64,000 bases of DNA from the IMG/VR virus record IMGVR_UViG_3300038424_000251, positions 186,001 through 250,000 of that record, one strand, 5' to 3'. The notes under the pieces are model-generated. The model saw nothing but the letters and a program-made list of their open reading frames with translations. It did not search any database and was not told the origin of the DNA. Below are positions 44,261 to 63,720 of the stretch, piece by piece. How positions within the stretch are numbered: the stretch's first letter is position 1; every line of letters starts with the position of its first letter. Both the position numbers and the translations under genes were made by a program.

Positions 44261-44300
44261 AAAAAGTAACGGCGCTGACGATAGTAAAGTCGGCGCCGTT
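44261..44300 (-). terminator. 12-bp hairpin terminator
   Basis: aacggcgctgac-gatagtaaa-gtcggcgccgtt, with A5 at 44261-65 giving a U-tract on the minus strand. Confidence 0.7.
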
Positions 44301-44381
44301 CACGTGCGTTTATAATAATTATCGATAAAGGAATCATCGCAGGCTCCGGTCCCCTACTCTCTGGAGGTTTATCTCCACAAC
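44261..44381 (-). ncRNA. candidate ~120-nt small RNA carrying the 42-nt motif (copy 1)
   Basis: Promoter TTGACT 44415-10 / TAGACT 44393-88; motif 44320-44361; terminator stem 44268-44300 then U-tract. Confidence 0.55.
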
Positions 44382-44416
44382 GGTAATAGTCTAACAAAGT
44401 TTTTATAAAAGTCAAG

Positions 44417-45112
44417 CTAAATCTTTTGATAGACAAGCCCGCCAGTGGAATCGATGAGTCGTTGCCATCCTTCGGGAGCTTTGCAAGGTTCATCATAATG
44501 GTAAAAATATTTTGGTAAATTTGCCAAAATAATAGTGCCGGGTTTAGCATCTTGAGCGAGTTTCTTTTCTAATTCTATTTCCAGCTCGTTCTTGTGAAGA
44601 GGACAATAGAAATAAAGAATGTCAAATTGATTATATCCTGTATAAGTTAGTGCGTTTCCTTGAATGAAAAAATCACGGTCACAACGGCAAGAACCATATT
44701 GACGAAAAATATAGTCTGCATTTAGCTTACTAAACAACCCTCGTCCAGCTTCAATCAGTTCTTTCCTCAATTCCAAACCGAAAGCGTCAAATCCAAAACA
44801 ACTGGCTAAAAACACTTTTTGCCCAACGCCACAACCAACATCGAGAAATTTTATTTTGGATATTTGTGTAGATGTCAAATGTAACTCTTTGACAACAAAT
44901 TGGAGTTGTTGAATGAAATCGTTTATTCCAAGATGGATGCATTTATATCCACTATCAGCATCCACATGACGCTGATATTTTTGGTCAGCAGTTTCACCGA
45001 TTGTTTCATTGGCTTTTTGTGCTTCAATCTCAAACATCTTGTCAACGAGATTGCGAAAGCATCGGTCCATCAGAGAAGAGTCAGCCCGGTTATAATCGAG
45101 CAAAGAATTCAT
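44417..45112 (-). CDS. class I SAM-dependent methyltransferase
   Basis: KFLDVGCGVGQKV, GLELRKEL, IQGNAL, DILYFYCPL; probable ATG at 45112. Confidence 0.8.
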   Translation of the reverse strand: MNSLLDYNRADSSLMDRCFRNLVDKMFEIEAQKANETIGETADQKYQRHVDADSGYKCIHLGINDFIQQLQFVVKELHLTSTQISKIKFLDVGCGVGQKVFLASCFGFDAFGLELRKELIEAGRGLFSKLNADYIFRQYGSCRCDRDFFIQGNALTYTGYNQFDILYFYCPLHKNELEIELEKKLAQDAKPGTIILANLPKYFYHYDEPCKAPEGWQRLIDSTGGLVYQKI

Positions 45113-45113
45113 G

Positions 45114-45296
45114 CTATTCTCTTTCGTGAAATCCAATTTGGAAAATTTGGGGTTTGCTACCAATAGCAAGGGGAATGAAGTCTATAGCTTCGTGAGTTTC
45201 TTCGTTCCCGTAGTCACGAAGCTGAACGGGTTGCTTCAATTCCAACGGTGACATTTCGTAAAGTTTTTCCAACAGTTCTTGATATGTTAGTGCCAT
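45114..45296 (-). CDS. hypothetical protein
   Basis: ORF track; own promoter. Confidence 0.6.
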   Translation of the reverse strand: MALTYQELLEKLYEMSPLELKQPVQLRDYGNEETHEAIDFIPLAIGSKPQIFQIGFHERE

Positions 45297-45343
45297 ATAA
45301 ATGGTAATTTATCAAAGATATGAAAAGAGTCAAGCGTTGTCAA

Positions 45344-46051
45344 TTAGGATTGGAGTCTGTTACTACCTACCGATACAATGGATGATTTACGAGTCCACCT
45401 TTCGATAAGCTTGAAATAAGCTTCCTGCTCAGTTTTACCGTGACCAAACGGATTTTCTGCTGACGGGCAAATTTCGGATGGTTGAGGACACCAAACCATG
45501 ATGCCGGTTGCATCGTTTATGGCAAGCAATGGATGATTACAAATAGGACACGTTTCTTTCAAGGTGCGGGCATCTTCGACAATCTTTTTGACTTCTACCA
45601 CAGGGTCAATTTTGACTTTCACTGACGGAGTGATACCGGTTGGTTCAACCTTCAAAACTTCCACTACCAAAGGAATTTCAACGGTTGGCGTTGTGTCAGG
45701 TTTCGCTTCCACCTTGGCAGTTTCGGTTGACTCGGATAGTAATTTTGGTGATTCAGCTGCGGGAACAATTACGGGTTCAGTTGGAACAGTTGGCGGAATA
45801 ACGGCTGGTGTTGGTGTTACAGGTGCTGGTGAAGGGGTGACGATAGGAACAGGTTGACCGTCTGCCAATTTCCACAATTTTGACGGTTTTCCTTTTCCGG
45901 CAGATGGCCGGTTTCCGGCAGTCACGATTACGCCACTTTTGATGGCTTCTTGATACCGTATCCAGACTTGCTGGTTGGTTTGATTATTGAACTTCGCTAA
46001 TTCCGTGTGGGTGAAAACTCCACTTGGAAATTTTAATGGTGTTTTATTCAT
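45344..46051 (-). CDS. putative winged-helix DNA-binding protein with Pro/Thr/Val-rich linker and C-terminal Cys motif
   Basis: N-terminal FTHTELAKFN...SGVIV...GKGKPSKLWKL; CPICNHP...WCPQ..ICP. Confidence 0.55.
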   Translation of the reverse strand: MNKTPLKFPSGVFTHTELAKFNNQTNQQVWIRYQEAIKSGVIVTAGNRPSAGKGKPSKLWKLADGQPVPIVTPSPAPVTPTPAVIPPTVPTEPVIVPAAESPKLLSESTETAKVEAKPDTTPTVEIPLVVEVLKVEPTGITPSVKVKIDPVVEVKKIVEDARTLKETCPICNHPLLAINDATGIMVWCPQPSEICPSAENPFGHGKTEQEAYFKLIERWTRKSSIVSVGSNRLQS

Positions 46052-46241
46052 AAAGCTAGTTTATCAGCATTCTATAAAAAGTCAAGCGTTAATTGAATTT
46101 CTCAAATATCGTTAAAGTTTTCAATATTGATATTCTCCAAAGAAGTTTTTACAGGGCTTGACTTCTTATAGAAATGATGTAAAATGTTTTCACAATCGAA
46201 ACAAACATAAAACAAAAACAAATCAAAAACCATAAGTAAAT

Positions 46242-46760
46242 ATGAGTAAAAACGCAAAGAACGCTCGCAAGGGCAAGAGTCAAAAGGGTGAATGGGGCCA
46301 TATTGGAGCACCCCCGAAGAAAACCAACTGGCCCAAACGGCCATTCACGATGGCTACTTTGTTCAGTCGCAATGAGCATCAGTGCGAATTGTCACTCCGA
46401 AACAAGGTGGATGCCGGCGTGAAGGATGGAACAATTCTGGAGCTCCAGTCGAAGAAACAAGCTCACGGTGCGGTTGGCCGCCCGAAGTCTGTTTTCGTAT
46501 TGAAGGAAAACTACGACAAAAGCACCATGACTTTGGCAACCGCCAAGGTGAAGAAAACCAAGGTGGCTCCCGTTTCTACCCCTGTCGCAGCCGCTCCGGC
46601 GTCTGTAGCAGTTGCACCGGCCGCACCCACAACGGCAGCACCCGCCGAAGCTGCTTCTACCACTGCTCCCCCGCCTGCTCAGTCAGCACCCGCAGTGAGT
46701 GAACCAGTTTCCTCTCCGGCAGCTGAAACCGCTCCGGCGATTCAGCCGGCTGTTGGTTAA
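46242..46760 (+). CDS. putative winged-helix DNA-binding protein with Ala/Pro-rich tail, divergent relative of 45344..46051
   Basis: PFTMATLFSRN...DGTILE...GAVGRPKSVFVL. Confidence 0.55.
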   Translation: MSKNAKNARKGKSQKGEWGHIGAPPKKTNWPKRPFTMATLFSRNEHQCELSLRNKVDAGVKDGTILELQSKKQAHGAVGRPKSVFVLKENYDKSTMTLATAKVKKTKVAPVSTPVAAAPASVAVAPAAPTTAAPAEAASTTAPPPAQSAPAVSEPVSSPAAETAPAIQPAVG

Positions 46761-46780
46761 GCTGTTGAAATACAATACAA

Positions 46781-46822
46781 AACGGGGCTCGTGTAGTCAA
46801 TGATACGAGCCCTGTTTCCTTT
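46781..46822 (+). terminator. intrinsic terminator
   Basis: aacggggctcgt...acgagccctgtt followed by tcctttt. Confidence 0.65.
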
Positions 46823-46863
46823 TCAGGGCTTGACATTTTTCAAATGTTTGGTAGAATATTACC

Positions 46864-47595
46864 ATGATGAATTTGTTAGGAATACTTGTAATCGTTTTCA
46901 GTGTACTATTATTTTCATTAATAGTGATGTATTTCCTTTTCTTCCTGCCTGCTTATTTAAAAGCCATAACGGGTGTAAAGCTGACATTATGGCAGAAATT
47001 TTGTTATAGGGGTTATTATTGGTGTCGTCTGGTCTTCGTCATCATTAAAACGATTTTGTCCTAACGCTTGACATTTCTTAAATGTTTGATAAAATACCCA
47101 CATGAAACGGAAAAAGAAAAAGAGTAATGTTATCACAGCTTACCAATACAAGGGCTACACCATTTATATCTGTGATCATAGTGAAGGTTACTATGCTTCC
47201 ATTGCAGATGCAGATGGAGAGTATGTTGACTGTTCTCCGTATCGAAATGACATTCCAAGTGTCAAGGAATGTGCAGAAAACACTATTGACCAACTATGAA
47301 ATTTAATTTAATTGCGTTTCCGAGTGATAGATTCACTTATGATAAGCATACTTTTACCTTCACAAGTGAAGCATCAGATATGGATGACCGCCATCTTCAG
47401 CGCATTTATAACGATGCTTGTGATGTTGGATTTGCGGTTAAATTGTTTACAGATGAAATCGTTACCTTCGTATTATCAAAAGTTGTGAAGGATAAAGGGG
47501 GTGATATTACATCATGGGAATATGTTCTTACTGAGGAAAGTATTCGCCAATATCCCGTATATTCTTCTTTCAAGGCAACGGTATTTAATGATTGA
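46864..47595 (+). other. three small hypothetical ORFs (46864..47064 membrane, 47102..47299, 47296..47595)
   Basis: ORF track; leaderless promoters at 46830 and 47068. Confidence 0.6.
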
Positions 47596-47632
47596 CGCTT
47601 GACTTTCCGTAATTGTTTGGTATAATTCGGTT

Positions 47633-49081
47633 ATGAATTTTGACACAACCGGTTTATTACAGCCGCAATTTAAACATGCTGAATTTCTTGTCAATTCTCT
47701 TGAGCAAAACGGTATTGCATGGGATGGTTCCGCAACTGGCACAGGTAAAACTTATGCAGCTTGTGCTATCCTTCGTCATCTTAAATGTAAGTTCGTAGTT
47801 ATCTGTCCTAAACTTGGTATTCCTACATGGAAGTTAGTGCTTGAATCCTTTGGTCTAAAACCTGAATTCATCATTAATTATGAGAAATTAGCCCGTGGTA
47901 ACACTTCATTTTACAAAAGAATTTCTCAAAAGAAGTATAAGAAACTCTACAACATTGGCAAGGATATTGAAGTCCCTGAATTTCTTCGGGCAATGTTCAA
48001 GATTCCAAAAGACTGGCTAATTGTATTGGATGAGAGTCATAAGATGAAGGGCGTTGACTCTTTGAATGCTGGAATTCTTTTTAATATTAAGATGCAAGGA
48101 TATAAATGTCACTTAATGTCAGCGACACAAGCAACGTCTCCGCTGGACATGAGAGCATTCGGTTTTGCAATGAACCTTCACAATGGTCAAATGAAGGAAT
48201 TTAAGAAGTTTGCTGAATCTGCTGGTGCGCAGTGGATTGGTAAATGGGGACGACAATATTTTGATTCGGAAAATACAGAATCAATGGCAAAAATTCAAGC
48301 TGTTCGTGAACATCTTTATAATTTCAGAAAAGTAGGGTCGCGTCTCACTCGAAGGGACATGAAGGATATTTTTCCGCCTACACAAGTTGTGGCTGAAGCT
48401 TATGACATGGGCACCGCATCCGATAAGATTCAGGAAGTTTATGATGAAATGGAATCAGAATTAGATTTACTGGAGAAACGGTGTGAATCTTACAAAGACC
48501 ATGTTCTTGCTGCCATCATAAAGGCAAGACGAAAAGCTGAAATGTTAAAAGTTCCTACTATCGTTGAAATGGTGGCAGACTATAATACAGAAGGCCGTTC
48601 AGCAGTTATTTTTGTTAATTTTACTGATACCATTGAAGCAATCGTTTTACGCCTTGGGAAAGAATTTAATCCTGCTTTGGTCGGAAAAATTTACGGTGAA
48701 CAATCGATGAAGCAACGGCTTCAAGACATAGACGAGTTTCAAGCTGACAAAAAACATTTCATGGTGGCAAATCTTGCTGCTGGTGGCCAATGTATTAATT
48801 TGCATGATATTTTGGGCAATCGCCCGCGTTCATCGGTCATCAATCCATCATGGTCAGCAATTGCTGTTCTCCAGTCAGCCGGACGAATTGATAGAGCTTA
48901 TGCTCTTTCGGATGTTTATCAAAGATTCTTATACGCAGCGAGAACGATTGAAGAAAATGTTTGCAGACGGTTTAATGATAGAAACCGTTTTGTTACTGCT
49001 CTGAATGACGGCACCTTATCGGATGCTGATTTAATCCCTACGGAAAGATTATTCAGATTTGCCAAAGGAATGAATATCTGA
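47633..49081 (+). CDS. superfamily 2 (SNF2/SWI2-like) helicase/translocase
   Basis: SATGTGKT, INYEKL, LDESH, SAT, VIFVNF, RLQDIDEFQ, AGGQCINL, QSAGRIDR. Confidence 0.85.
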   Translation: MNFDTTGLLQPQFKHAEFLVNSLEQNGIAWDGSATGTGKTYAACAILRHLKCKFVVICPKLGIPTWKLVLESFGLKPEFIINYEKLARGNTSFYKRISQKKYKKLYNIGKDIEVPEFLRAMFKIPKDWLIVLDESHKMKGVDSLNAGILFNIKMQGYKCHLMSATQATSPLDMRAFGFAMNLHNGQMKEFKKFAESAGAQWIGKWGRQYFDSENTESMAKIQAVREHLYNFRKVGSRLTRRDMKDIFPPTQVVAEAYDMGTASDKIQEVYDEMESELDLLEKRCESYKDHVLAAIIKARRKAEMLKVPTIVEMVADYNTEGRSAVIFVNFTDTIEAIVLRLGKEFNPALVGKIYGEQSMKQRLQDIDEFQADKKHFMVANLAAGGQCINLHDILGNRPRSSVINPSWSAIAVLQSAGRIDRAYALSDVYQRFLYAARTIEENVCRRFNDRNRFVTALNDGTLSDADLIPTERLFRFAKGMNI

Positions 49082-49499
49082 TAAGGTATTTATTTCGCAT
49101 GGGTGCCAAATATTATTTTAAGAAATGTTTGATATGTGGTCGACCAGTGAATGGAGCAGACCAACCTTATATCTGTAATCGTTGCACTGCGGAAGGATGG
49201 ATAAAATCACCTGACCCTGACCCCGAAAAAAAGTTTGGTCTTTGGAAATCATTATGGTATCTTATAACATATAAACCATATATGAAAGTTTCGAGAGGCT
49301 TGACGAAAAAGTAATTCATGGTAGTATTTATTTGTGAACATTCCACAAATGAAAGTGAAGTGTAAGAATGGACATGAATGGTTTATTATGTTACCGCCTT
49401 GGTGGGCAGATTTACATTCAATTCACATGAATTGCCAAAAGTGCGGTGAAAGGCCTGACAGTTTTATGGTAGGGCCTTATCATGTCATTCCCGATGAAC

Positions 49500-49576
49500 G
49501 CAGGAGTAGCTCAACTGGATAGAGCATCTGCCTTCTAAGCAGATGGTTCCGGGTTCAAGTCCCGGCTCCTGTACCA
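49500..49576 (+). tRNA. tRNA-Arg(TCT)
   Basis: Cloverleaf: gcaggag/ctcctgt, anticodon stem tctgc-cttctaa-gcaga, T-arm ccggg-ttcaagt-cccgg, encoded CCA. Confidence 0.95.
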
Positions 49577-49582
49577 AAATTT

Positions 49583-49798
49583 ATGATTTTACAAACAGCT
49601 AATGATTTGTTGCTCTGTGAAATGGAAAAAAGTCATGGATTGAGACAATCCCTAGACGAAGCACATCAAATAATTGATGAACAAGATGAATCAATCTGGA
49701 AGTTGCAACAAACAATTTTTGCTTTACAATATCCCGAATTATGGGCAAGAATTAAAGCAAACGCAGTATCTCCTTTAAGGGAACTGATAACAATATAA
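49583..49798 (+). CDS. hypothetical coiled-coil protein
   Basis: ORF track. Confidence 0.55.
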   Translation: MILQTANDLLLCEMEKSHGLRQSLDEAHQIIDEQDESIWKLQQTIFALQYPELWARIKANAVSPLRELITI

Positions 49799-50022
49799 GA
49801 TTTTATGAAGAATGTGCCTGAACATGAAAAGATATTTGTAGTATTTCCGTCATTTGGTTACTGGGAAATTGACGGTAAGCCAGTTTCTTCGAGAGAAGCT
49901 TTCGCTAATTATTCAAAGGCTGTTTGGAAGCCATCGGAGATTGCTCTTCATCCTGAACGGTATTATTAAATAATAACTTCATCGCTTGACAAAATATAAA
50001 AACTGTGTAAAATCATAACATT

Positions 50023-50409
50023 ATGAAAAAAGCATTCACGTTGATTGAGTTAATGATTGTTGTTGCAATCCTTGGTCTTTTGGCTGCTATTGTTGTTGGT
50101 GGTAGCGGCGGTTGTAGTGTCAGTGATGGAACAAGAACAGGCACCATTTCAAAATTCAGTAACAAAGGCATCTTTGTCAAATCGCATGAGGGTGAATTGA
50201 TTTTGGGCGGTGTTATTCAAGGTAAGTCAGCATCGGCTAACGTTTGGGAATTCAGTTGCTTAAATCAGTCATTGGTCCCTGCTCTTGAGTCTGCGGTGGA
50301 TAATGGTAACATGGTTTCTTTGAAATATCATCAAACACTTTTGTATAATCCATTCCGAAGAAACACAAGTTATTTGATTACCAGTGTCACGGTGGTAACA
50401 AACAGGTAA
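50023..50409 (+). CDS. protein with type IV prepilin-type N-terminal cleavage/methylation motif
   Basis: MKKA-FTLIELMIVVAILGLLAAIV; C-terminal SDGTRTGTISKFSNKGIFVKSHEGEL domain. Confidence 0.8.
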   Translation: MKKAFTLIELMIVVAILGLLAAIVVGGSGGCSVSDGTRTGTISKFSNKGIFVKSHEGELILGGVIQGKSASANVWEFSCLNQSLVPALESAVDNGNMVSLKYHQTLLYNPFRRNTSYLITSVTVVTNR

Positions 50410-50492
50410 AATTTTATTCCCTTGTCTGATAGGGTTATTGAAAGACCGGACTTTCACAATTTTTTGCCGATACTAAAGATTGAAGATTAGTT

Positions 50493-50684
50493 ATGCCAGA
50501 TAATTTCATAAGAAACCGCGAAGGTAAAATCATTGGTCGCCAAGATGGCAATTGGCTTCGTGATGGTAGTGGAAAGCTTGTTGCTAGACATGATAAGGGT
50601 GATAATCGAACCAGAACGCGTGAAGGTAAAATTGTAGGTTCTGGTGACCAGAGATTGAGGGAATTAGGAAAATCAGAGGCTTGA
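50493..50684 (+). CDS. small repeat protein (R.REGKIIG / RDGSGKLVA / RTREGKIVG)
   Basis: ORF track; three internal beta-hairpin-like repeats. Confidence 0.65.
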   Translation: MPDNFIRNREGKIIGRQDGNWLRDGSGKLVARHDKGDNRTRTREGKIVGSGDQRLRELGKSEA

Positions 50685-50713
50685 CATTTTTTGGTTCTTT
50701 GATACTATTTATT

Positions 50714-51128
50714 CGTTGTCCAGTGGTAAAAGTCGCCGGTGAGCGATGTTCCCATTGGAATTAGCCAAAGCTGGGAGATGACTAGAACGTGACAGTAAAG
50801 CGTTCTTAGCTTAAATAAAAGCGCCGGGAACAAATACCGAAACACCGGAGACAGTTGAAACCCAATTGTTAGGAAAAGAGAGTAAGAAGATTACTCGTGG
50901 CCGCTAAGCGACCCGAAGGTTGAGACTACAACGTATCGGCGTAATGCTGATGGTAATGTGGAAAGAAATGAATGCTCCGAAAGGGGCCGTCTGGAGTCGG
51001 CTAAGTAAGAAACTTGGTCCATGCCGGTCTAAGTTTCTGAGGATGACCAGATGAAATTGTAGAGGCTGTATTGCCGATTGGCTGAAAGCGGCAACTTTCA
51101 TAACCAATCATCCAGCCCATGAATTTTT
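50714..51128 (+). ncRNA. candidate large structured ncRNA (~410 nt), family not recognised
   Basis: Own promoter (TTGACA 50681 / TACTAT 50703); no sense ORF; at least 10 helices; two pseudoknot-type pairings near 3' end; ends in U-tract. Confidence 0.65.
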
Positions 51129-54073: not shown

Positions 54074-54334
54074 TCAAGCGCTGGAAAGTTGACTATTGAG
54101 TTTTGCAACCAAAGTTCGCTTACGTTTGAATTCTACAAGAATTTGTGACCGAGTGACTTGATAATCTTCCAGTTCACATTTTATTCTCCAGTTAAGTAGA
54201 AATTCCTTTGAAGTAACATACATGCCATTAAATTTAGTCCAGATGCCATAATCTCCATCCTTCAATTCACCGTCATAAATTGAGGAAGTTACATTATCAT
54301 TTTCATCAAAATGATAAATAATTTTACCTGACAT
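54074..54334 (-). CDS. hypothetical protein
   Basis: ORF track; stop overlaps -35 box. Confidence 0.6.
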   Translation of the reverse strand: MSGKIIYHFDENDNVTSSIYDGELKDGDYGIWTKFNGMYVTSKEFLLNWRIKCELEDYQVTRSQILVEFKRKRTLVAKLNSQLSSA

Positions 54335-54371
54335 GCGGATAATTTATCAAAGAAATTGGATTTGTCAAGCG

Positions 54372-54453
54372 TTGATAATTTTATAACGATAAAGTAATTT
54401 AAAGATCCTCCGGTCCCCCACTCTCCGGCGTTTTTCAGCCACATCTTTACTAT
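54372..54453 (-). ncRNA. ORF-less promoter cassette carrying the 42-nt motif (copy 2)
   Basis: Promoter gcttgacatttcttaaaacaatggtaatat (54460-54489); motif 54384-54425. Confidence 0.5.
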
Positions 54454-54483
54454 GGGGAAATATTACCATTGTTTTAAGAAATG

Positions 54484-54690
54484 TCAAGCGTTGCTTCTTG
54501 ACTTTGGTGGAGTGCGGTGCTGGATAATCTGATATGCTTGTTTGCAACGCCACGCAAGAGCTGGGTAATTTATATCTTTGCCCCTATTGCAACGAAAATT
54601 ATCAGCAAGACAAACAAACATTTGTTCCAGTTGGTCTGGTTTAAGTTTGAAAATTTTGCTTAAGAATTCGGAAAATTCTTTTTCATCCAT
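54484..54690 (-). CDS. hypothetical protein
   Basis: ORF track; stop overlaps -35 box. Confidence 0.55.
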   Translation of the reverse strand: MDEKEFSEFLSKIFKLKPDQLEQMFVCLADNFRCNRGKDINYPALAWRCKQAYQIIQHRTPPKSRSNA

Positions 54691-56795: not shown

Positions 56796-56802
56796 AAATT
56801 GG

Positions 56803-56909
56803 TGGCCAGTCTGGGTCTTCTCCAGTTACCAACGCCTCTTGGTCAATCGTAGTCAAATCCAAGCACTCCCTACGATTTAGTCAGCATCCGCCTTTTACGG
56901 CTCTGGCCA
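56803..56909 (-). ncRNA. candidate five-way-junction structured RNA (107 nt)
   Basis: P1 tggccag/ctggcca; gcc/ggc; aatcgtag/ctacgatt; accaa/ttggt; ctgg/ccag. Confidence 0.55.
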
Positions 56910-56997
56910 TTAAATTGACGGGGTTCCTACTACACGAAGCTTATGGGCCTTCGCCGCCACTCAAACTTTATACTGTTCGGTTACCCCGTTTAAAATC

Positions 56998-57297
56998 TTA
57001 TGACCTGCTTGGCCGCTTTGTTTTAGCAGCTCTTACCACTTCGGACTTTGATGTCCGCCTTGGTGACGTTTCTTTTTCAGTCACCGTTGCTACTGGTGCT
57101 TGAGCAGGTTGCTTTTCCTTCAATTGTATAAGCCGAGCAAGTTCTCGTTGACTTCCACCACGGTTGGTAACAAGAGTAATTTTGTCTGCTCGTGATAGTC
57201 TGTTATATTTGAGTTGCCGAGTTTCGGCTTCTTCCCGTTTCCGAGCCTTGCGAACATCGGCCTTTTTGTGTGAGTAACCTTTTTCTTTTCTTGCCAT
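56998..57297 (-). CDS. highly basic hypothetical protein
   Basis: ORF track, K/R-rich; own promoter. Confidence 0.65.
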   Translation of the reverse strand: MARKEKGYSHKKADVRKARKREEAETRQLKYNRLSRADKITLVTNRGGSQRELARLIQLKEKQPAQAPVATVTEKETSPRRTSKSEVVRAAKTKRPSRS

Positions 57298-57337
57298 AAT
57301 GATGATATTTTATATCTTTTTATAGAATTGTCAAGCG

Positions 57338-57991
57338 TTAGTTGGTTCTATATGAAAATCTGAAAAATTCAATAGGGGGATAACCGGGTCCAATAGGTGC
57401 GTTTACACTTGCAAGTGGAGTATTATTATGATTACTTGCATAAATAGACCATAATGGATTACCAAGATTGGTTGAAGCCCACAATGTCCACGATGTTGCA
57501 TTTGTTGGTATCCACGGTAATGAAATAGTTAAATTAGTTATTGGATAATTTGTCCATGTATATCCTACTGGTATGTAAAATATATTAGTTCTATGTAAAA
57601 CAGGACTATAATTAGTTTGCCAGTAGCCTACTAAATTTGTTGTTATATTAACTCGAAGATTTGGTGTAGATAACAATTGAAAATCTGTTGAATAATGTAT
57701 TGTTGGTGAAAATGAACCTTCAAGTTTATTTATATCATAAGAACTGATTACAAAATAATAAACTGTTTTTGGTAATAAATTAGAAATTGTTTGGTTTGTT
57801 ATACTTGCGTTACTATTAGTGATAACACTTGTATAAATTCCTAAAATAGTACCGTAATAAACTTTATAACCAGCTACAGCTGGATTTACACTTTTGTTCC
57901 ATCCTACGGTAAGAGTAGCACTTTCAGTGGTTGAAGTTAGAACTATTACTAATGATAGAAGAGTTCCTAAAAATTTTGATAAATGTTTCAT
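57338..57991 (-). CDS. secreted fibronectin type III domain protein
   Basis: Signal peptide; TLTVGWNKS...VAGYKVYYG...TISNLLPKTVYYFVISSYD; C-terminal W.L.ASTNL...W...FFR. Confidence 0.8.
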   Translation of the reverse strand: MKHLSKFLGTLLSLVIVLTSTTESATLTVGWNKSVNPAVAGYKVYYGTILGIYTSVITNSNASITNQTISNLLPKTVYYFVISSYDINKLEGSFSPTIHYSTDFQLLSTPNLRVNITTNLVGYWQTNYSPVLHRTNIFYIPVGYTWTNYPITNLTISLPWIPTNATSWTLWASTNLGNPLWSIYASNHNNTPLASVNAPIGPGYPPIEFFRFSYRTN

Positions 57992-58025
57992 GTTGAATGA
58001 TATTTTACACGTTTTTATAAAATTG

Positions 58026-58910
58026 TCAAATGTTTTGAATCACTTCAAATGAAGTTTTTGGAACATCCAATAAAACAGAATCGTTTTCCAGCCAAATGTC
58101 AACGAAACTTCGTCCCTGAGTTTCTTCTATGGAATAAACGTCAATGGTATCATTCGGGTAAAAGGTTTTTTCACCCGGCATATCGTTACCTTCATCATAG
58201 TCAACCGTGGTCAACTTTAAAAATTTCACTTTTTTCATATCATCCATAACTATAGAAGGATATGAAAAAAAGTCAAGCGCTTATTGATGACTTAATTAGG
58301 CTGAAGTTCGTTGAATGGCAACCCTTTAGCTTGTTCCTTGAAATAATCTGGGTTATCTGTAATATTCACGAAAAGTTTCGGGTCAATATTTGATGCGGTT
58401 GCTAACCGTTCACCCGTTTTAGGGTCAATAAGAATTAGCACTTTTGGATTCAATGGTAACGGTGTCATATTTTATATCTTACTGTGGAATTAGAAAAAGT
58501 CAAGCCTTTTGACGAAGAATAAGAATTATGACTACAATACCAAATCCAGCTAAAACAACGGTATAAGGTTCCATATTTTATGTATCACCGTATGTTAATG
58601 ATTCATCATTGCGTTCACGAAGGAATTCTCGATAAGCAGGTAATTTGTTAAGTTCTTCTAATACTTCTACAGAATCAGGAAGTCGTTCCTCTTCTATGTC
58701 AATTTCTTCTGAATCTGATTTCATTATTTATTCCAATAAATTAACTTGGTCAGGGTCACAATCAAAACAATCTCCCTTTTGGTCCTCAACTGTGATTAAA
58801 AGGCCATCGTGACGGATTATTTTCACCGTTCCCAAAAACTCATGCCAATCATCTTCGGCTTTTGGAGTAACCATAACTGCTTCACCAACTTCAAAACGAT
58901 TTTTAATCAT
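58026..58910 (-). other. small hypothetical cassettes (58026..58247, a 58-aa ORF MTPLPLNPK..., a 48-aa acidic ORF MKSDSEE..., 58728..58910)
   Basis: ORF track plus two short ORFs read by eye. Confidence 0.55.
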
Positions 58911-58990
58911 GGCGTTACGTTATCACGATTCTATAAAATGTCAAGCGTTTGGATGCTTGACATTTAAAAAATCTATGGTAAATTGATATT

Positions 58991-59819
58991 GTGAATGTAG
59001 AATTAATGGAACATGAGTTGAATTTACTCAATGGTAAAACCATTGTTATTGTTCGGGATGGATTTGGAACGCAAAGTGATTCATGGGTTGGTCAGTTAAC
59101 GGTATTGCCTGAAAAATATCCTCTTGGTTTTCATTTTCAAAGTACAGATTTTGCAATATATTTCACCGCAGATGATGTTCTTAAACTTGATGACTCAATT
59201 GACAAAATAACTGCAAAAATTATTCGTCTAAAAGGACCAAACGATTATGCCCAAGTCTATCAAATCTCACATTGACCGCCATACCCAAGCTGCATCAGTA
59301 GTAGCTTCTCACAGTTATTTTGTCATTGCTGAGATTTCTAGTAATGAGAACCCCGGTTTACTGGTGGGAACAGAAGTAAGGAAATATAAAGACCCCGAAG
59401 CCGCTCCCAGTCGATTTTGGAATGGATTATATTGGACATCTTTTGTTCTTTGCCCGAATGGTGAAATACGAAAAGTTTGTTGTGATGTTCTGAAACCAAG
59501 GAATACTGATACATACTTTAAACGTCAACAAAAGATTTTTCCTCAAATCGCCGCTTGACATTTTCTAAAAGTTTCGTATATTTAAGCCATTATGAACAAT
59601 ATGGCATTGGAACGAGCCCAGAAATGGTTTACGGAACTTGAAGTCCGAACCGAAGCTCGCCAGAATTGTCTTTTGGTCAATCGTGACGATATCGATAAAC
59701 TATTCGGTATTGGTGTTATTTATGATACTGTTTTGGTGGAACTTAAAACTGGGTTGAATTACAGTCGTTACTATTGGACAAAGAAAGACCGTGAATGGCT
59801 TTATCTTGAAACACTTTAA
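58991..59819 (+). other. three hypothetical ORFs (58991..59275, 59247..59558, 59592..59819)
   Basis: ORF track; promoters at about 58958 and 59555. Confidence 0.6.
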
Positions 59820-60055
59820 TTTTGTGAAAATGGTATTAAAGAAACCTACAAGACCATTCAGAGTAGTATTGAAGTATTGGTTTCCAAGAAGACTTACACT
59901 AGCTTGTAATCCAAGAATTCATGCTTGGCTTTGGTGGAATTTTTAACTCCATTAACCCTATAGTGGGCGGGATAGTACCCCCAGCGGAAAATAAAATTAA
60001 GGACCCCCCGCGCTATTTTTCTGCGTTTTGGTGCCGCAAAAGATATTTATGGGGT

Positions 60056-60604
60056 ATGAGGAAAGAGTTAAAAGAAAAACTGAAACAAGACTCAAAACGG
60101 TATAAACACTACAAACAGAAGCGTAAAGAAGCATATAAACGAAAAATAAAAAGAATTAGGAATGACCCTATTCGTTATGAAAAATTAAGAAAAAAATGGA
60201 AGCGCTACTATGAAAAAATTACAGTAATATCAAGAGAAAAGAAAATGGAGAGGCGCAGTAAATCTCCCTATTGGCAAAAGAAGATGGGTTATCAAAGATA
60301 TAAATGTCATACATTTCAACTAATGGCTAGACATACTAACCGATTATGTAAGATTGGTAAGATAACTGCTTTAGACTTATGGAGCCTCGCAAAAAAACAG
60401 GGACTGCGCTGCCCAATTTCTGGAGAAAAATTAACCATTGAAAACATTTCGGTTGACCACATTATACCACGAAGCAAGGGCGGCACCAATATATTAGAAA
60501 ATCTAAGATTGGTGACAAGAGCCGTTAATACAGCAAAACACACTATGTCCGATGCTGAATTTTTCTCATTCTGTCAAAATATAGTCAATCATCATATCGC
60601 ATAA
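60056..60604 (+). CDS. HNH endonuclease (basic N-terminus), paralog of 41250..41702
   Basis: CPISGEKL...SVDHIIPRSKGGTNILENLRL...VNTAK; probable ATG at 60056. Confidence 0.85.
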   Translation: MRKELKEKLKQDSKRYKHYKQKRKEAYKRKIKRIRNDPIRYEKLRKKWKRYYEKITVISREKKMERRSKSPYWQKKMGYQRYKCHTFQLMARHTNRLCKIGKITALDLWSLAKKQGLRCPISGEKLTIENISVDHIIPRSKGGTNILENLRLVTRAVNTAKHTMSDAEFFSFCQNIVNHHIA

Positions 60605-60675
60605 TATCACCTATTTTTGAGCACACTACTTTACGCTTACCACGAATTTAACATAAAATTCAATTATTGTCAAGC

Positions 60676-60780
60676 GTGACCATTAACGTTAAAGGAATCA
60701 TCGCAGGCTCCGGTCCCCTACCCTTCGCTTTCTTCGCTAGTCTGGCTTTCGGTGTCGCCGCCAACCCATTCCCAATTTCT
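60676..60780 (-). ncRNA. ORF-less promoter cassette carrying the 42-nt motif (copy 3)
   Basis: Promoter gcttgacatttcttaaaacaatggtaaaat (60787-60816); motif 60684-60725. Confidence 0.55.
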
Positions 60781-60868
60781 GAAAACATTTTACCATTGTT
60801 TTAAGAAATGTCAAGCGCCACCGCAACGCTTGACTTTCTAAAAGAAATTGATAAAGTGGTATCACAAT

Positions 60869-61366
60869 ATGAGCAACATTTCAACAAGTTATCTGGATGT
60901 CGCATTGGACCCGAAAAAGTCTCACGCGACAATTGACGGAGTAATCAAATTAATTGAATTGTCTAAAATTGAATTTGATACTATTGTTTTTCGGGGAATG
61001 TCGGGTGCTCTTATGGCTCCGATAGTTGCTCATCAACTTGAAAAATTTGTCACCATTTGCAGAAAACCTTCTGATGATTCTCACGCCGGTTGCGGCCGTC
61101 TCGAAGGCCATGTTGGAATGAAAAAATATATCATTTTTGATGATTTTATTTCTTCCGGCAAAACGATTCAATCAATACTGGATACTATTAAAGACCATTA
61201 TGAATTTGAGAATGAAACCGAACCAAACTGTGTTGGTATATTTCTTTACAGGTCGGAACGGTCTATGCCTTTTTCTGGCAAAAATAATAGAGACGATATA
61301 CCTGTTTTTTCACATACCCTTGGCATGGGAAATAAACCAATATTCACTGGCGTTAAAGAGGCTTGA
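60869..61366 (+). CDS. type I phosphoribosyltransferase-fold protein
   Basis: IVFRGMSGALMAPIVA...ICRK...YIIFDDFISSGKTI PRPP-binding loop. Confidence 0.8.
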   Translation: MSNISTSYLDVALDPKKSHATIDGVIKLIELSKIEFDTIVFRGMSGALMAPIVAHQLEKFVTICRKPSDDSHAGCGRLEGHVGMKKYIIFDDFISSGKTIQSILDTIKDHYEFENETEPNCVGIFLYRSERSMPFSGKNNRDDIPVFSHTLGMGNKPIFTGVKEA

Positions 61367-61396
61367 CAGTTTCAACTTTTTTGGTAAATTATTGTT

Positions 61397-62327
61397 ATGA
61401 AAAATCTTTGTGGTAAGACGCGACCAAAGGACAAACCTTACGAAGTATGGCGTTCATTTGATGGAACATGGACGTGGAATGTTCTGAAAAAATGGCAGGC
61501 AGACGATAACAAACCTTATGCACGGTGGTTTTGTAATGTTGTCACTCCCATTTGTCCCAATGGTGAAATGGGCGACGTTTATGTTGCTGAAATCAAAGCC
61601 AATGCCGTGAAAGTGGCTTGACATTTTATAAACATTGTATAAACTTCAATCACAATATGAAAACACACTTTAAGCTTCCGATAACGAAAATGTGTATTGT
61701 TGTGTGGTATCGCAACAATGTAAAACACGAGCAACTGATTGCTACTCCTGCTAACAATGACCGGCTTGTGAATACTATGCTAATGGACCACAAGGTTGGT
61801 TATTCCGAAATTCGTGCTGTTAAACCCGTTGAAGCACAAGGTTTAATTGGTCAACGTTTCTAATAACAATTAACGTTATGAAAATTGAAATTCCTGACAA
61901 ATTGATTGAACGCATTCAACGTCAAGTTGGAATCAGTGGTTACGATGAACCTACTACGGAAAAAGAATTAACAGATTTTATTGTTTCTTCCGTGGAAGAA
62001 AATTTGACAAGGGATTTTGGCCGTGATGAGTGAAGCTTGACATTTCTCAAAACAAATGTAAACTGATTTTACAATATGAAAAAAGTTTACGTTGTAGCAT
62101 GGGAAAGCAGGGACGGTAACGGGGTTGAATGGTATCATACACCCGAAGCTGCTGACAAAGCTTTTCACGAAGAAAAGAAAAATTGTGAAATTTTCCGCAG
62201 TCGTAATTGGGCAGCTTATCGTTTTGATTTTCCAACAATAATGTCATGTCGCCGGATGATTTCCCATGATGTTGAATGTAACTATCTTAACCATTTGATG
62301 TTACCGACAACGATTAAATACCCCTAA
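61397..62327 (+). other. small hypothetical cassettes (61397..61621, about 61657..61863, 62076..62327)
   Basis: ORF track; each with own promoter. Confidence 0.6.
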
Positions 62328-62372
62328 CAAAGCTTGACATTTGTTAAAACAATTGTATCATGTCATCACAAT

Positions 62373-62810
62373 ATGACAAACACAATTGAATTAAACAAAA
62401 ATTTCTTCTTCGGTGGTAACGCAACTTTCACTGTTGAATCAGACGTGACTCACGCGTGGCGAACGTATAAAATTCGCCGCTTCAAGAAAACCGAACGGTT
62501 TCATAATCCTTCTTATGGTGTCTTTTTGTTGGCCGGTCCTGACAACGAAAATAGTTACGCGTATATCGGAATGGTTGACAAGGCCACCGGTTTCTTCCGC
62601 CTGACATCCAAAAGCAAACGAAATGAAAATTCCTCCGATGTCATTATCTTTAAGTGGGTTATGCAAGGTGTATTTAACGGAATGACGTTAAAAAATGGAA
62701 CGATTCACCATGAAGGGAAATGTGGCTGCTGTGGCCGCACTCTAACAGTCCCGGAATCAATTCGCCGTGGTATCGGACCAGAATGTTGGTCAAGGATTTA
62801 CGGGGCTTGA
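62373..62810 (+). CDS. phage protein with C-terminal DUF6011-type zinc motif
   Basis: CGCCGRTLTVPESIRRGIGPECW; probable ATG at 62373. Confidence 0.75.
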   Translation: MTNTIELNKNFFFGGNATFTVESDVTHAWRTYKIRRFKKTERFHNPSYGVFLLAGPDNENSYAYIGMVDKATGFFRLTSKSKRNENSSDVIIFKWVMQGVFNGMTLKNGTIHHEGKCGCCGRTLTVPESIRRGIGPECWSRIYGA

Positions 62811-62849
62811 CAGAAACAATTTTTTTGGTAAATTGATATTAAATAAAAT

Positions 62850-63249
62850 TATGGGTAAAATCATTGTTACAAATCCGTTTAATCAAATTGACGAAATGTT
62901 TAAGGATTATGTTCGCCCAGCGGAATATAATCAGCCGTTTGATTACTTAATGGCTGTTTGTGGTCGTATTGATTCACCCGGTCCACGGGATGAACGGTGG
63001 GAATACATTCGTGACGCAGGAATGGGATTGATTGAAAGAGTGTTGAAACGTCAACCGATTGGTGCAGGACCACATTATTTTGTTTTTCCTGACCGTTGGA
63101 TGGTACCCGGAGAAGCAATGGAGTTTGAATGTGCATTGCAGGAAAATCCCGACGCGAAAAAGTTCAAACGTGTTTATGTTGTGACGCATCAACCTTATCT
63201 TGTTAGTGGATGTTTACGAGAACAATGTCGAATTGTTCGGAAGGCTTGA
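62850..63249 (+). CDS. hypothetical protein
   Basis: Downstream part of track ORF 62767..63249 (MGKIIVTNP...); stop overlaps -35 box. Confidence 0.6.
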
Positions 63250-63284
63250 CATTTCTAAAAAGAAATATAAACTACCATCACAAT

Positions 63285-63593
63285 ATGATTAACGTCACTC
63301 TTGAAACGCCCGAATTCAAATCATGGATGCAGGGCATCATCGATAAAAACAGGGCCTACATGGCCGCAAGTTTTCCATCATTGGATGTGCCCACAATAAC
63401 GGCTACCGAAGGCAGTCGATATATTCGTGTCATGCGAGACAATTCCGCTCATGCTTTCATTGACCGCACCAACGGCGACGTGCTTAAACCGGCATCATGG
63501 AAAGCACCCGCCAAACACGCAAGAGGCAACATTTTTGATACTTTTAACGGATTGGGCAGCATGGGACCTTATGGACCGGCGTATCTTCGTTGA
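63285..63593 (+). CDS. conserved phage hypothetical protein
   Basis: AHAFIDRTNGDVLKPASWKAPAKHARGNIFD, a motif common in large phages. Confidence 0.7.
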   Translation: MINVTLETPEFKSWMQGIIDKNRAYMAASFPSLDVPTITATEGSRYIRVMRDNSAHAFIDRTNGDVLKPASWKAPAKHARGNIFDTFNGLGSMGPYGPAYLR

Positions 63594-63637
63594 AAGACGA
63601 AGGCTTGACATTTCTTAAAACAATGGTAAAATTTTCT

Positions 63638-63720
63638 TACAATAAAGTTTGAGGCCGACTGAAAAGCGCCAAGAGTAAGGGACCAGAGAGTGCGTTGATT
63701 ACTTTATCGTTAAAAAGTGA
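63638..63720 (+). ncRNA. ORF-less promoter cassette carrying the 42-nt motif (copy 4)
   Basis: Promoter gcttgacatttcttaaaacaatggtaaaat (63603-63632); motif 63671-63712. Confidence 0.55.

What the first reader, a model, noticed from the sequence alone, without database searches (positions are those of the whole stretch)
44261..63720. Four dispersed ORF-less promoter cassettes share an ungapped 42-nt motif: candidate new small-RNA or cis-element family
Seen: in the transcribed sense, copy 44361-44320(-) gagagtaggggaccggagcctgcgatgattcctttatcgata; 54425-54384(-) gagagtgggggaccggaggatctttaaattactttatcgtta; 60725-60684(-) aagggtaggggaccggagcctgcgatgattcctttaacgtta; 63671-63712(+) aagagtaagggaccagagagtgcgttgattactttatcgtta. 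They align without gaps: RAGRGTRRGGGACCRGAG-N9-ATTMCTTTAWCGWTA, ending in a near-palindrome TAWCGWTA. Each lies about 20-55 nt downstream of the predicted start of its own sigma70 promoter, after a small GC hairpin, in a cassette with no convincing ORF. Copies at 54k, 60k and 63k carry the same 30-bp promoter (gcttgacatttcttaaaacaatggtaa[a/t]at, 29-30/30 identical), so promoter and motif travel as a unit. The 44k copy ends at a 12-bp terminator, defining a ~120-nt RNA; the others run into the next promoter. Two copies lie within ~300 bp of HNH genes. Inference: a multicopy early sRNA (protein sponge or anti-defence decoy), a promoter-proximal antitermination RNA of the HK022 put/lambda nut kind, or a DNA operator decoy. 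I do not recognise a described family.
Basis: partly seen in the sequence, partly recalled or inferred. Interest (0 to 1): 0.85.

Follow-up and report, generated by a model that had tools for sequence, protein, structure and literature searches.

The report
New multicopy phage small-RNA family
Four promoter-driven cassettes without genes in this huge uncultivated phage are copies of an undescribed small non-coding RNA family that recurs, in several conserved versions, in related phages; its function is still unknown.

Summary
The 42-nt motif occurs exactly four times in the window (0 expected), always on the transcribed strand about 20-55 nt after a strong sigma70-type promoter, and three copies share an identical 30-bp promoter. 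It is not a window-specific oddity. With patterns, an HMM and a covariance model I collected 38 distinct copies from about 20 viral or metagenomic contigs. Each phage has 2-5 copies, and a fifth copy of this phage lies just beyond the window end.

All copies share one layout:
- a promoter;
- a variable 5' hairpin (P1) whose stem shows compensatory changes;
- a linker, RAGRGU;
- a possible 5-bp hairpin, GUAGG/CCUGC, with the conserved loop GGACCRGAG;
- a conserved tail, UUMCUUUANCGNUA.

No Rfam family matches. No reading frame is conserved. Apparent resemblances to 16S helix 45, the sarcin-ricin loop, 5S rRNA and boxA are at chance level.

About a third of copies are followed by a strong hairpin, giving discrete RNAs of roughly 95-130 nt. 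About a third run straight into the next promoter. The five versions in this phage each have closer counterparts in other phages than in their own genome.

Verdict: a genuine new phage non-coding RNA family. It most likely acts as an abundant early small RNA that presents an invariant docking sequence. The mechanism is unproven.

The parts
44388..44415 (-). Promoter of the 44k cassette (TTGACT, 16 nt, TAGACT with TG upstream)
   Evidence: Read; same architecture as the 46 gene promoters tabulated.
44363..44376 (-). P1 hairpin of the 44k copy (GGAG / 6-nt A-rich loop / CUCC)
   Evidence: Folds. The P1 stem covaries across the family.
44320..44361 (-). 42-nt motif, copy 1. Possible P2 hairpin at 44357-44339 (GUAGG, loop GGACCGGAG, CCUGC), then the conserved tail.
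   Evidence: 74.6 bits, E 9e-15.
44261..44301 (-). Intrinsic terminator of the 44k RNA (long GC stem plus U5). It is shared back-to-back with a convergent ORF-less transcript that starts at the 44127(+) promoter.
54460..54489 (-). Shared 30-bp promoter, 54k cassette
54427..54440 (-). P1 hairpin of the 54k copy (GGC / UGAAAAAC / GCC)
54384..54425 (-). 42-nt motif, copy 2. This is the most divergent copy; its 9-nt variable part is GAUCUUUAA.
   Evidence: 35 bits, E 2e-5. Its closest counterpart is L103:4697-4765.
54341..54368 (-). Next promoter, 15 bp after copy 2. It drives the leaderless 86-aa gene 54074-54334.
60787..60816 (-). Shared 30-bp promoter, 60k cassette. It lies back-to-back with the divergent promoter at 60830(+).
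60726..60766 (-). Extra 5' domain (GGCGGCGACAC...GCC) plus a short P1 in the 60k copy. This long subtype is also seen in L116, L038, L136 and L138.
60684..60725 (-). 42-nt motif, copy 3
   Evidence: 77.5 bits, E 2e-15.
60605..60673 (-). Second ORF-less promoter cassette directly after copy 3. Its transcript runs antisense into the 3' end of the HNH gene at 59921-60604(+). The same arrangement is conserved in L116 and L103.
63603..63632 (+). Shared 30-bp promoter, 63k cassette
63653..63670 (+). P1 hairpin of the 63k copy (long type with a GAAA tetraloop)
63671..63712 (+). 42-nt motif, copy 4
   Evidence: 51.2 bits, E 3e-9.
63724..63751 (+). Next promoter, 11 bp after copy 4. It drives the gene that starts at 63763.

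Best explanation
The four sites are paralogous genes, or 5' modules, of an undescribed family of short non-coding RNAs. The family is carried by a clade of uncultivated, mostly large phages.

Shown:
- Each copy sits on the transcribed strand 27-67 nt after a strong sigma70-type early promoter.
- The transcript begins with a hairpin (P1) whose sequence varies but whose pairing is kept by compensatory changes.
- P1 is followed by an almost invariant module of about 42 nt. The module can form a 5-bp hairpin with the conserved loop GGACCRGAG, and it ends in a conserved tail, UUMCUUUANCGNUA, for which no consistent pairing is found.
- The family is multicopy in every genome that carries it.
- Its versions, distinguished by the type of P1, are conserved between phages.

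Inferred: it acts as RNA. Most probably it is an abundant early small RNA of about 75-130 nt whose invariant module is read sequence-specifically by a protein, either host or phage. That would make it a decoy, a sponge or a ribonucleoprotein scaffold. The 5' hairpin would stabilise the RNA and distinguish the isoforms.

The confidence given is for this trans-acting, factor-docking reading. That it is a real, selected non-coding RNA family I rate at about 0.85.
For: - Non-random and oriented: 4 copies against 0 expected. All 38 distinct copies lie downstream of a promoter on the same strand; 33 of 38 are caught by a simple promoter pattern.
- Found in relatives from independent samples.
- P1: 3 of 4 pairs show changes on both sides, in 20 cells. 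0 of 500 shuffles reach this, and slid controls drop from 82% paired to 27-42%. A hairpin is predicted in all 34 copies tested.
- Non-coding: every frame has stops in some copies. The start codon is not conserved. The third codon positions of the only plausible frame are invariant while the first positions vary (alignment A1).
- Stand-alone units: about 12 copies are followed within 6-26 nt by a hairpin of -9 to -21 kcal/mol. The window's 44k copy has such a hairpin with a U5 tract.
- The genes downstream are unrelated between loci, so the element is not the leader of one particular gene.
- Isoforms are conserved: the 5' parts are 0.89-1.0 identical to counterparts in other phages for four of the five versions, against 0.33-0.63 to most paralogues in the same genome. 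For the 60k version the ungapped comparison was uninformative (best 0.52), and its counterparts rest on the shared extra 5' domain. The 54k and 65k versions share a P1 type (0.85).
- The module has no consensus secondary structure. Three of the four window RNAs fold no better than shuffles. This fits a sequence that is read as a single strand.
- The surrounding early genes are leaderless and lack Shine-Dalgarno sequences: 46 of 46, with the ATG 6-12 nt after the -10 box in all but a few. Cassettes without a 5' ATG are therefore clear exceptions.
Against: - No transcript data exist, and the host is unknown.
- About 13 of 38 copies, including three of the four in the window, have no terminator and run into the next promoter within 35 nt. 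There the module would be the 5' part of a longer read-through RNA, which fits a cis role equally well.
- In several relatives a gene without its own promoter follows the hairpin directly (L052, L062, L005, L132). There the RNA is formally a leader.
- P2 has no compensatory changes, and its inner pair is formed in only about half of the copies.
- No binding partner has been identified.
- The box TANCGNTA extends into a longer palindrome more often than base composition predicts. This could point to a DNA-binding dimer.
Confidence: 0.4

Rival explanations
1. Cis-acting promoter-proximal leader. The nascent P1-P2-tail RNA stays with, or recruits factors to, the transcribing host RNA polymerase (as with nut, put or the rrn leader), or it sets the stability or translation of the read-through transcript. 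Transcription from these promoters would then continue through downstream hairpins and promoters into the next genes.
For: - The position is always promoter-proximal, and there are two successive hairpins.
- About a third of copies feed directly into the next gene.
- In L052, L062, L005/L119 and L132 a GC hairpin and then an ATG follow with no promoter in between.
- P1 loops are A-rich, like boxB loops. Some tails contain CUUUAAC, the central part of the real E. coli boxA at L141:29-40.
- Canonical terminators are not enriched in this region: 19 found against 17.6 expected.
Against: - The boxA-defining GCUC is absent, and the aligned positions vary (UUCC, UUAC, UCAC, UACC).
- The 44k and 60k copies face convergent genes, where read-through would only produce antisense RNA, and the 44k copy ends at a strong terminator.
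- Nearly every gene already has its own promoter, so processive antitermination has little to do.
- Downstream genes are unrelated.
Confidence: 0.25
2. DNA-level element. The conserved box (C)TTTANCGNTA(AAG), with or without the GGGACC box two helical turns upstream, is an operator for a dimeric phage or host DNA-binding protein. It would act as a roadblock or as a regulator of the adjacent downstream promoter.
For: - TANCGNTA is palindromic, with positions 3 and 6 free.
- The palindrome extends to 5 or more bp per arm in 23 of 35 copies and to 7 or more in 5 copies.
- Box-like sequences also occur away from the motif: at 41040-41088 as the arms of an inverted repeat, at 46107-46117 between divergent promoters, and downstream in L136, L038 and L116.
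- A -35 box follows 10-15 or 23 bp later in many copies.
Against: - The orientation relative to the upstream promoter is strictly kept in 38 of 38 copies, which a palindromic operator does not need.
- The left arm is invariant while the right arm decays. This is asymmetric, unlike sites for dimers.
- P1 covariation indicates selection on a single-stranded fold.
- A third of the copies have no promoter downstream.
Confidence: 0.12
3. Translation-linked element. A tiny 5' ORF that spans P1 ends at the UAG or UAA inside GUAGGGG, and the GGAG-N6-NUG that follows mimics a ribosome-binding site. The module would then work by engaging ribosomes, for example as a ribosome or 30S decoy or as a termination-reinitiation switch.
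For: - In most copies an ATG, GTG or TTG just before or within P1 is in frame with the T[AG][AG] triplet. The distances are 15, 24, 27, 30 and 33 nt across different P1 types, and indels are compensated in L074 and L130.
- Copies with UGG instead of a stop never have G at the NUG position: 0 of about 8, against 15 of about 26 for UAG/UAA copies (pair counts).
- GGAG here is the only Shine-Dalgarno-like sequence found after any promoter in the window.
Against: - About a third of copies, including 44k and 60k, have no such ORF.
- The peptides are unrelated between P1 types. UGG variants abolish the stop, and internal stops occur in L052, L082 and L132.
- Translation in this phage appears to start at 5'-terminal AUGs. 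These RNAs lack one.
- The codon pattern is anti-coding.
Confidence: 0.08
4. Selfish or neutral repeat. The unit of promoter, hairpin and motif is a mobile or recombination-spread cassette, comparable to the promoter/stem-loop cassettes of T4-type phages. It would have no function of its own beyond supplying promoters or recombination homology.
For: - Identical 30-bp promoters occur in three copies.
- The 44k copy and L004 share promoter, P1 and motif but have different flanking genes.
- One copy is associated with a homing HNH gene in three phages.
Against: - Across phages the promoter and P1 diverge while the 42-nt module stays nearly invariant, and P1 keeps its pairing. That is purifying selection on the transcript, not on the ends of a mobile unit.
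- There are no terminal repeats or target duplications.
- The isoforms are old and orthologous between phages.
Confidence: 0.1

Closest known systems
lambda nut sites and the rrn leader (boxB hairpin plus boxA), which give Nus-factor-dependent processive antitermination
   Same: Promoter-proximal and transcribed. A small hairpin with an A-rich loop is followed by a conserved single-stranded U-rich element. Part of the copies contain CUUUAAC, as does the real E. coli rrnH boxA (L141:29-40).
   Different: The boxA core GCUC is missing, and those positions vary. A second hairpin with the conserved loop GGACCRGAG lies between the two elements. There are 2-5 copies per genome. Some copies end at terminators or face convergent genes. 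No N-like gene has been identified.
HK022 put RNA, a cis-acting two-hairpin RNA that makes RNA polymerase resistant to termination (from my own knowledge)
   Same: A promoter-proximal RNA of about 70 nt with two hairpins, and no protein cofactor is needed in principle.
   Different: put is defined by structure. Here the strongest conservation is in primary sequence outside the proven helix. No sequence comparison was possible with these tools. The 44k copy is followed by a functional-looking terminator.
Protein-sponge small RNAs (CsrB/RsmZ type, 6S RNA) and phage RNA decoys (from my own knowledge)
   Same: Highly expressed, multicopy or multi-site, with conserved short motifs displayed in loops. 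The P2 loop carries two GGA triplets.
   Different: The conserved part is far longer than a GGA site. Each RNA has one module rather than many. No partner is known. Whether the host has CsrA is unknown.
T4-type promoter/stem-loop cassettes (PeSL) and the T4 stable RNAs of unknown function in its tRNA cluster (from my own knowledge)
   Same: Repeated early promoter plus hairpin units between small early genes of a large lytic phage. They lie near a tRNA cluster (tRNAs at 49.5-52.1 kb).
   Different: PeSLs have no long invariant transcribed module. Here selection is on the 42-nt RNA sequence and on P1 pairing.
Rfam DUF805b motif (RF02914)
   Same: A hairpin followed by AAGAGUAGG. This is the only Rfam model that aligns to the element at all.
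   Different: Scores are 11.1 and 9.8 bits against a gathering score of 35.6, with E 0.7-1.9 on 101-nt queries. The match covers only P1 and the first 9 nt of the motif.

Membership tests
Any Rfam 15 family | Covariance-model score at or above the family's gathering threshold | tested here: not met
   At gathering threshold only four tRNAs were found in the window. Nothing was found at the four sites at E<=5 over 23.5 kb. On 101-nt queries the best hit is DUF805b at 11.1 and 9.8 bits against 35.6. Nothing was found on seven relatives' loci.
boxA/boxB (nut, rrn leader) antitermination element | boxA core GCUCUUU(A) recognised by NusB-NusE (8 nt; PMC3177189) | tested here: not met
   The real boxA GCTCTTTAACAA is at L141:29-40. 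The phage tails read UUCC, UUAC, UCAC or UACC followed by UUUA, never GCUC.
boxA/boxB (nut, rrn leader) antitermination element | boxB-type hairpin next to boxA, with an N-like protein or Nus-factor dependence | tested here: inconclusive
   The P1 hairpin has an A-rich or GNRA loop and covaries. However, it is separated from the tail by about 40 nt that include P2. Protein dependence cannot be tested.
HK022 put-type RNA | Two conserved stem-loops that act in cis on RNA polymerase | tested here: inconclusive
   P1 is supported. P2 is 79% paired but has no compensatory change. Cis action cannot be tested in silico.
Short protein-coding gene or leader peptide | An open frame with a conserved start, and variation concentrated at synonymous positions | tested here: not met
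   All three frames are closed in some copies. The candidate start is ATG, TTG, CTG, TAA, CAT or CAA in different copies. Third codon positions are invariant while first positions vary.
rRNA mimic (16S helix 45 plus 3' tail, 23S sarcin-ricin loop, 5S loop E) | Similarity to real rRNA beyond chance | tested here: not met
   Against E. coli rrnH (L141), nhmmer gives only E 0.7-2.4 for 10-13-nt matches. The best local alignment scores are reached by 34 to 281 of 300 shuffled queries.
Mimic of a host-encoded RNA repeat (CRISPR repeat decoy, type III antitoxin repeat) | The same sequence present in bacterial genomes, in tandem arrays next to cas or toxin genes | tested here: not met
   A pattern scan of 185,579 species' genomes found only 3 loci on three small MAG contigs (1.2-15 kb); the two examined (L131, L132) have the same promoter-per-gene layout, and no arrays were found. 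Phage copies are dispersed, each with its own promoter.
CsrA/RsmA sponge RNA | Multiple GGA motifs displayed in hairpin loops | tested here: inconclusive
   Two GGA triplets lie in the 9-nt P2 loop, but only one such loop per RNA, and P2 is unproven. Host and CsrA status are unknown.
Palindromic operator for a dimeric DNA-binding protein | Symmetric conservation of both half-sites, independent of transcription direction | tested here: not met
   The left arm is invariant. The right arm is conserved for 4 bp in all copies, 5 bp in 23 of 35 and 7 or more bp in 5 of 35. The orientation relative to the promoter is fixed in all 38 copies.

The most novel reading that the evidence does not exclude
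The RNAs are a set of at least five conserved isoforms of one ribonucleoprotein scaffold or decoy. In this reading the invariant 42-nt module captures a host factor, such as a defence nuclease, a translation or RNA-decay component, or RNA polymerase, early in infection of a host whose phage genes are translated without leaders. The isoform-specific 5' hairpins would tune the target or the timing. This would be a new class of phage RNA-based host takeover or anti-defence tool.
Probability: 0.15. Interest if true: 0.85.

Novelty: new variant of a known kind. Interest (0 to 1): 0.6.

Why it matters
Non-coding RNAs of phages are poorly catalogued, and huge uncultivated phages have almost no functional RNA annotation.

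Here is a family with clear purifying selection and strong early promoters. It has several copies per genome and isoforms kept across phages from different samples. It sits in a genome whose early genes are all leaderless.

If it titrates or redirects a host factor, it would be a compact RNA tool for host takeover or counter-defence. If it acts in cis, it would be a new promoter-proximal control element. Either way it gives a defined 70-nt object that can be tested in vitro. It can also be added to RNA family databases, so that these cassettes stop being annotated as empty intergenic DNA or as spurious small ORFs.

Tried and rejected
1. Known RNA family. Rfam was searched at gathering threshold and at permissive E-values, on the window, on 101-nt stretches and on seven relatives' loci. 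Only sub-threshold DUF805b matches appeared.
2. Close cultured relatives. Megablast and blastn against GenBank phages found nothing except tRNA matches. tblastn with the helicase found one uncultured 484-kb phage at 22% identity.
3. Peptide reading. All three frames, a mini-ORF before the motif and an SD-like GGAG-N6-NUG ORF after it were examined. None is conserved.
4. 16S helix 45 and anti-SD tail mimic, sarcin-ricin loop and 5S loop E resemblances. These were attractive by eye, but they are at chance level against real E. coli rRNA.
5. boxA. The defining GCUC is absent.
6. Consensus structure of the 42-nt module. RNAalifold gives none. Mutual information finds no Watson-Crick covarying pair inside it. 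A candidate third hairpin (GWUGA/UUAWC) and a loop-tail pseudoknot (AAAG/CUUU) fail in about half of the copies (by inspection).
7. Antisense targets in the window. No complementarity longer than 10-13 nt was found.
8. Replication-origin reading. GC skew only follows gene orientation.
9. Host-encoded counterpart. The scan of bacterial genomes returned only phage-like MAG contigs.
10. Literature. Searches for similar phage RNAs and for DUF805b gave nothing relevant.

Full report
**1. The observation**

None of 100 dinucleotide-preserving shuffles gave a match, even with up to three mismatches allowed.

The 30-bp promoter is present three times, 29-30/30 identical. The consensus scan rates these three as 10-11/12 sigma70 matches with an extended -10. 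The 44k promoter is a weaker variant of the same type.

The 44k cassette ends in a long GC hairpin followed by U5 at 44301-44261. The other three are followed after 10-15 bp by the next -35 box. A covariance model built later finds these four copies and no others in the window.

**2. Genomic setting**

The window is part of IMG/VR contig 3300038424_000251 (365 kb). A near-identical 189-kb contig from another sample also exists. No cultured relative is detectable at the DNA level. The helicase's only phage match is an uncultured 484-kb phage at 22% identity.

The region is an early-gene block of many small genes with a tRNA cluster at 49.5-52.1 kb.

Nearly every gene has its own GCTTGAC-16-TAnAnT promoter. 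In 46 promoter-driven genes the ATG starts 6-12 nt after the -10 hexamer in all but a few, with a mode of 6, which places it at the transcription start. None of the 46 has a Shine-Dalgarno-like sequence. Promoter-like sites are twice as frequent as expected (119 against 52), while terminator-like sites are not enriched (19 against 17.6).

Against this leaderless background, the cassettes that lack a 5' ATG stand out as non-coding.

**3. The family outside the window**

I ran pattern scans of the viral, metagenome and genome collections. An HMM and a covariance model followed. Together they gave 38 distinct copies on about 20 contigs with G+C from 36 to 50%.

Every phage that carries the element has several copies within a few kb to 20 kb. 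This phage has a fifth copy about 1.2 kb beyond the window end, on the minus strand (L005:2406-2474).

The only hits in 185,579 bacterial and archaeal species genomes are three small MAG contigs; the two examined have the same promoter-per-gene layout and are probably mis-binned phage DNA. Two belong to an Ignavibacteriaceae MAG. So the sequence is phage-specific, not a copy of a host RNA.

**4. Anatomy**

All copies share one layout:
- A sigma70-type promoter 27-67 nt upstream, recognised by a simple pattern in 33 of 38 copies.
- In a subset, including the 60k copy, an extra 5' domain (GGCGGCGACAC...GCC).
- A hairpin, P1. It is either 3-4 bp with a 6-8-nt A-rich loop, or a longer form capped by a GNRA tetraloop.
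- The linker RAGRGU.
- GUAGG, the loop GGACCRGAG, and CCUGC, forming a possible hairpin P2. Five copies have a 6-bp stem with a 7-nt loop instead.
- The tail G.UGAUUMCUUUANCGNUA.

On the model-based alignment, P1 has changes on both sides at 3 of its 4 pairs, in 20 cells. None of 500 shuffles reaches that. Sliding the partner strand drops pairing from 82% to 27-42%. A hairpin is predicted in each of the 34 copies folded.

P2 is 79% paired but shows only one-sided changes, and its innermost pair forms in about half of the copies. It is compatible with the data but unproven.

The 42-nt module has no consensus structure by RNAalifold and no Watson-Crick covarying pair by mutual information. Three of the four window RNAs fold no better than shuffled sequence. 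The strongest conservation is therefore in primary sequence.

**5. It is not coding**

- Each of the three frames through the module is closed in some copies.
- The candidate start after GGAG is ATG, TTG, CTG, TAA, CAT or CAA in different copies.
- In that frame the third codon positions are invariant and the first positions vary. This is the opposite of coding selection.

One pattern remains curious. Many copies have an ATG, GTG or TTG just before or within P1 that is in frame with the T[AG][AG] triplet at the start of the module. The distances are 15, 24, 27, 30 or 33 nt, depending on the P1 type. Copies with TGG there never have G at the later NUG position.

However, a third of the copies lack this mini-ORF, and the peptides are unrelated between P1 types. 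These RNAs also lack the 5'-terminal AUG that this phage's genes use. I keep this as a low-probability rival.

**6. What follows the module**

About 12 copies are followed within 6-26 nt by a strong hairpin (-9 to -21 kcal/mol). In the 44k copy and several relatives the hairpin has a U-rich tail, which gives discrete units of roughly 95-130 nt.

About 13 copies run into the next promoter within 35 nt.

In a few relatives a gene without a promoter of its own starts directly after the hairpin.

The downstream genes are unrelated between loci.

The 44k and 60k copies point towards convergent genes, so read-through there could only give antisense RNA.

**7. Isoforms**

The five copies of this phage differ in P1 and in the 9-nt variable part.

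For four of them, the 5' part is 0.89-1.0 identical to a counterpart in another phage. The same comparison with paralogues in the own genome gives 0.33-0.63 (0.85 between the 54k and 65k copies, which share a P1 type).

For the 60k copy the ungapped comparison was uninformative. Its counterparts are recognised by the shared extra 5' domain.

The paralogues are therefore old and individually maintained. This argues against a merely redundant or selfish repeat.

**8. Comparisons with known elements**

*Rfam.* Nothing reaches threshold. The only alignment is DUF805b at 11.1 and 9.8 bits against a gathering score of 35.6. It reflects a hairpin followed by AAGAGUAGG.

*rRNA.* From memory, the module looked like 16S helix 45 plus its 3' tail. 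nhmmer also picked up 10-13-nt identities to the sarcin-ricin loop and to 5S rRNA. Against the real E. coli rrnH operon these matches have E 0.7-2.4, and shuffled queries score as high in 34-281 of 300 trials. I reject all three.

*boxA.* The tail shares CUUUAAC with the real rrn boxA in part of the copies. It lacks the GCUC that NusB reads (PMC3177189), and those positions vary.

*Palindrome.* The box TANCGNTA is palindromic and tends to extend: 5 or more bp per arm in 23 of 35 copies. Box-like sequences also occur elsewhere. But only the left arm is invariant, and the orientation relative to the promoter is fixed. That fits an RNA better than a dimer operator.

**9. Interpretation**

Shown:
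- This is a selected, transcribed-strand, non-coding, multicopy family.
- It has a covarying 5' hairpin and an invariant 42-nt module.
- It is specific to a clade of uncultivated phages and absent from Rfam.

Inferred, with probability about 0.4: an abundant early small RNA whose invariant module is a sequence-specific docking site for a protein. It would act as a decoy, a sponge or a ribonucleoprotein scaffold. P1 would stabilise the 5' end and mark the isoforms.

Rivals:
- A cis-acting promoter-proximal leader of the nut or put kind (0.25).
- A DNA operator (0.12).
- A selfish promoter cassette (0.10).
- A ribosome-engaging element (0.08).

None can be excluded without transcript or binding data.

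**10. Verdict**

Its general interpretation, a new small-RNA or cis-element family, is supported. The specific mechanisms it listed remain open, and the HNH association holds for only one copy.

The finding is a real and fairly interesting new non-coding RNA family. It is a new variant of the known kind "phage early non-coding RNA or leader element" and not, on present evidence, a new kind of system.

Noticed in passing
window 5591-63975 (whole window): Almost every gene has its own GCTTGAC-16-TAnAnT promoter. In 46 of 46 promoter-driven genes the ATG begins soon after the -10 box (6-12 nt in all but a few, mode 6) with no Shine-Dalgarno-like sequence. The early genes are therefore leaderless or have leaders of 5 nt or less. 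This is unusual for a whole phage gene block and hints at a host that translates leaderless mRNA efficiently.
   Followed up: partly
L005:2406-2474 (= about 65.2 kb in window coordinates, minus strand, outside the window): A fifth copy of the RNA in the same phage, of the GGCUGAAAGAUGCC P1 type. It is followed by a GC hairpin and then directly by a gene start, with no promoter in between.
   Followed up: partly
window 60605-60673 (-); also L116:10190-10330 and L103:4560-4700: A second ORF-less promoter cassette lies directly after the 60k copy. Its transcript runs antisense into the 3' end of the HNH gene at 59921-60604. The pair of cassettes plus the convergent HNH-like gene is conserved in two other phages. 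It may be an antisense regulator of the homing endonuclease.
   Followed up: partly
window 44127-44300 (+): Another ORF-less promoter cassette converges on the 44k copy and shares its hairpin as a two-way terminator. The RNA of about 150 nt contains a GGGGGUUCG stretch. It has no Rfam or tRNA match.
   Followed up: no
window 41040-41254 (-): The promoter at 41254 overlaps the end of the HNH gene at 41250-41738 and gives a leader of about 95 nt with a long hairpin before a small ORF. Further on, TTATCGTTAA and TTAACGATAA form the arms of an inverted repeat around a GC hairpin. These are the same box sequences as the motif's tail.
   Followed up: partly
window 46158-46240 (+), 18323-18395 (+), 50681-50790 (+): These are other promoters not followed by an immediate ATG. 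One is a 56-nt A-rich leader before the 172-aa gene, one is a 45-nt leader before the 781-aa gene, and one is an ORF-less transcript upstream of the tRNA-Met/Gly/Glu genes.
   Followed up: no
L004:242-300: A 59-nt tRNA-like gene has acceptor, D and T arms, but only 5 nt where the anticodon arm should be (Rfam tRNA 39 bits). It lies 480 nt upstream of that phage's counterpart of the 44k copy.
   Followed up: no
L062:3170-3255 and L103:10380-10463 (opposite strand to the copy): A convergent partial copy comprises a P1 of the GAUGAGGCC type plus AAGAGUAGGG, without the rest of the module. It overlaps the 3' flank of a full copy, so the 5' half can occur on its own.
   Followed up: no
family alignment: Two unexplained correlations. 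First, G at the third base of GU[R]GGGG never co-occurs with G four bases before UUMC. Second, in several genomes the boxes of two paralogues are exact reverse complements (TATCGTTA with TAACGATA; TAACGGTA with TACCGTTA). This could allow RNA-RNA pairing between isoforms.
   Followed up: partly
L131, L132 (contigs of an Ignavibacteriaceae MAG): Four copies lie on two small contigs binned with an Ignavibacteriaceae genome. The contigs have the phage-like promoter-per-gene layout. This is a weak hint at the host group.
   Followed up: no
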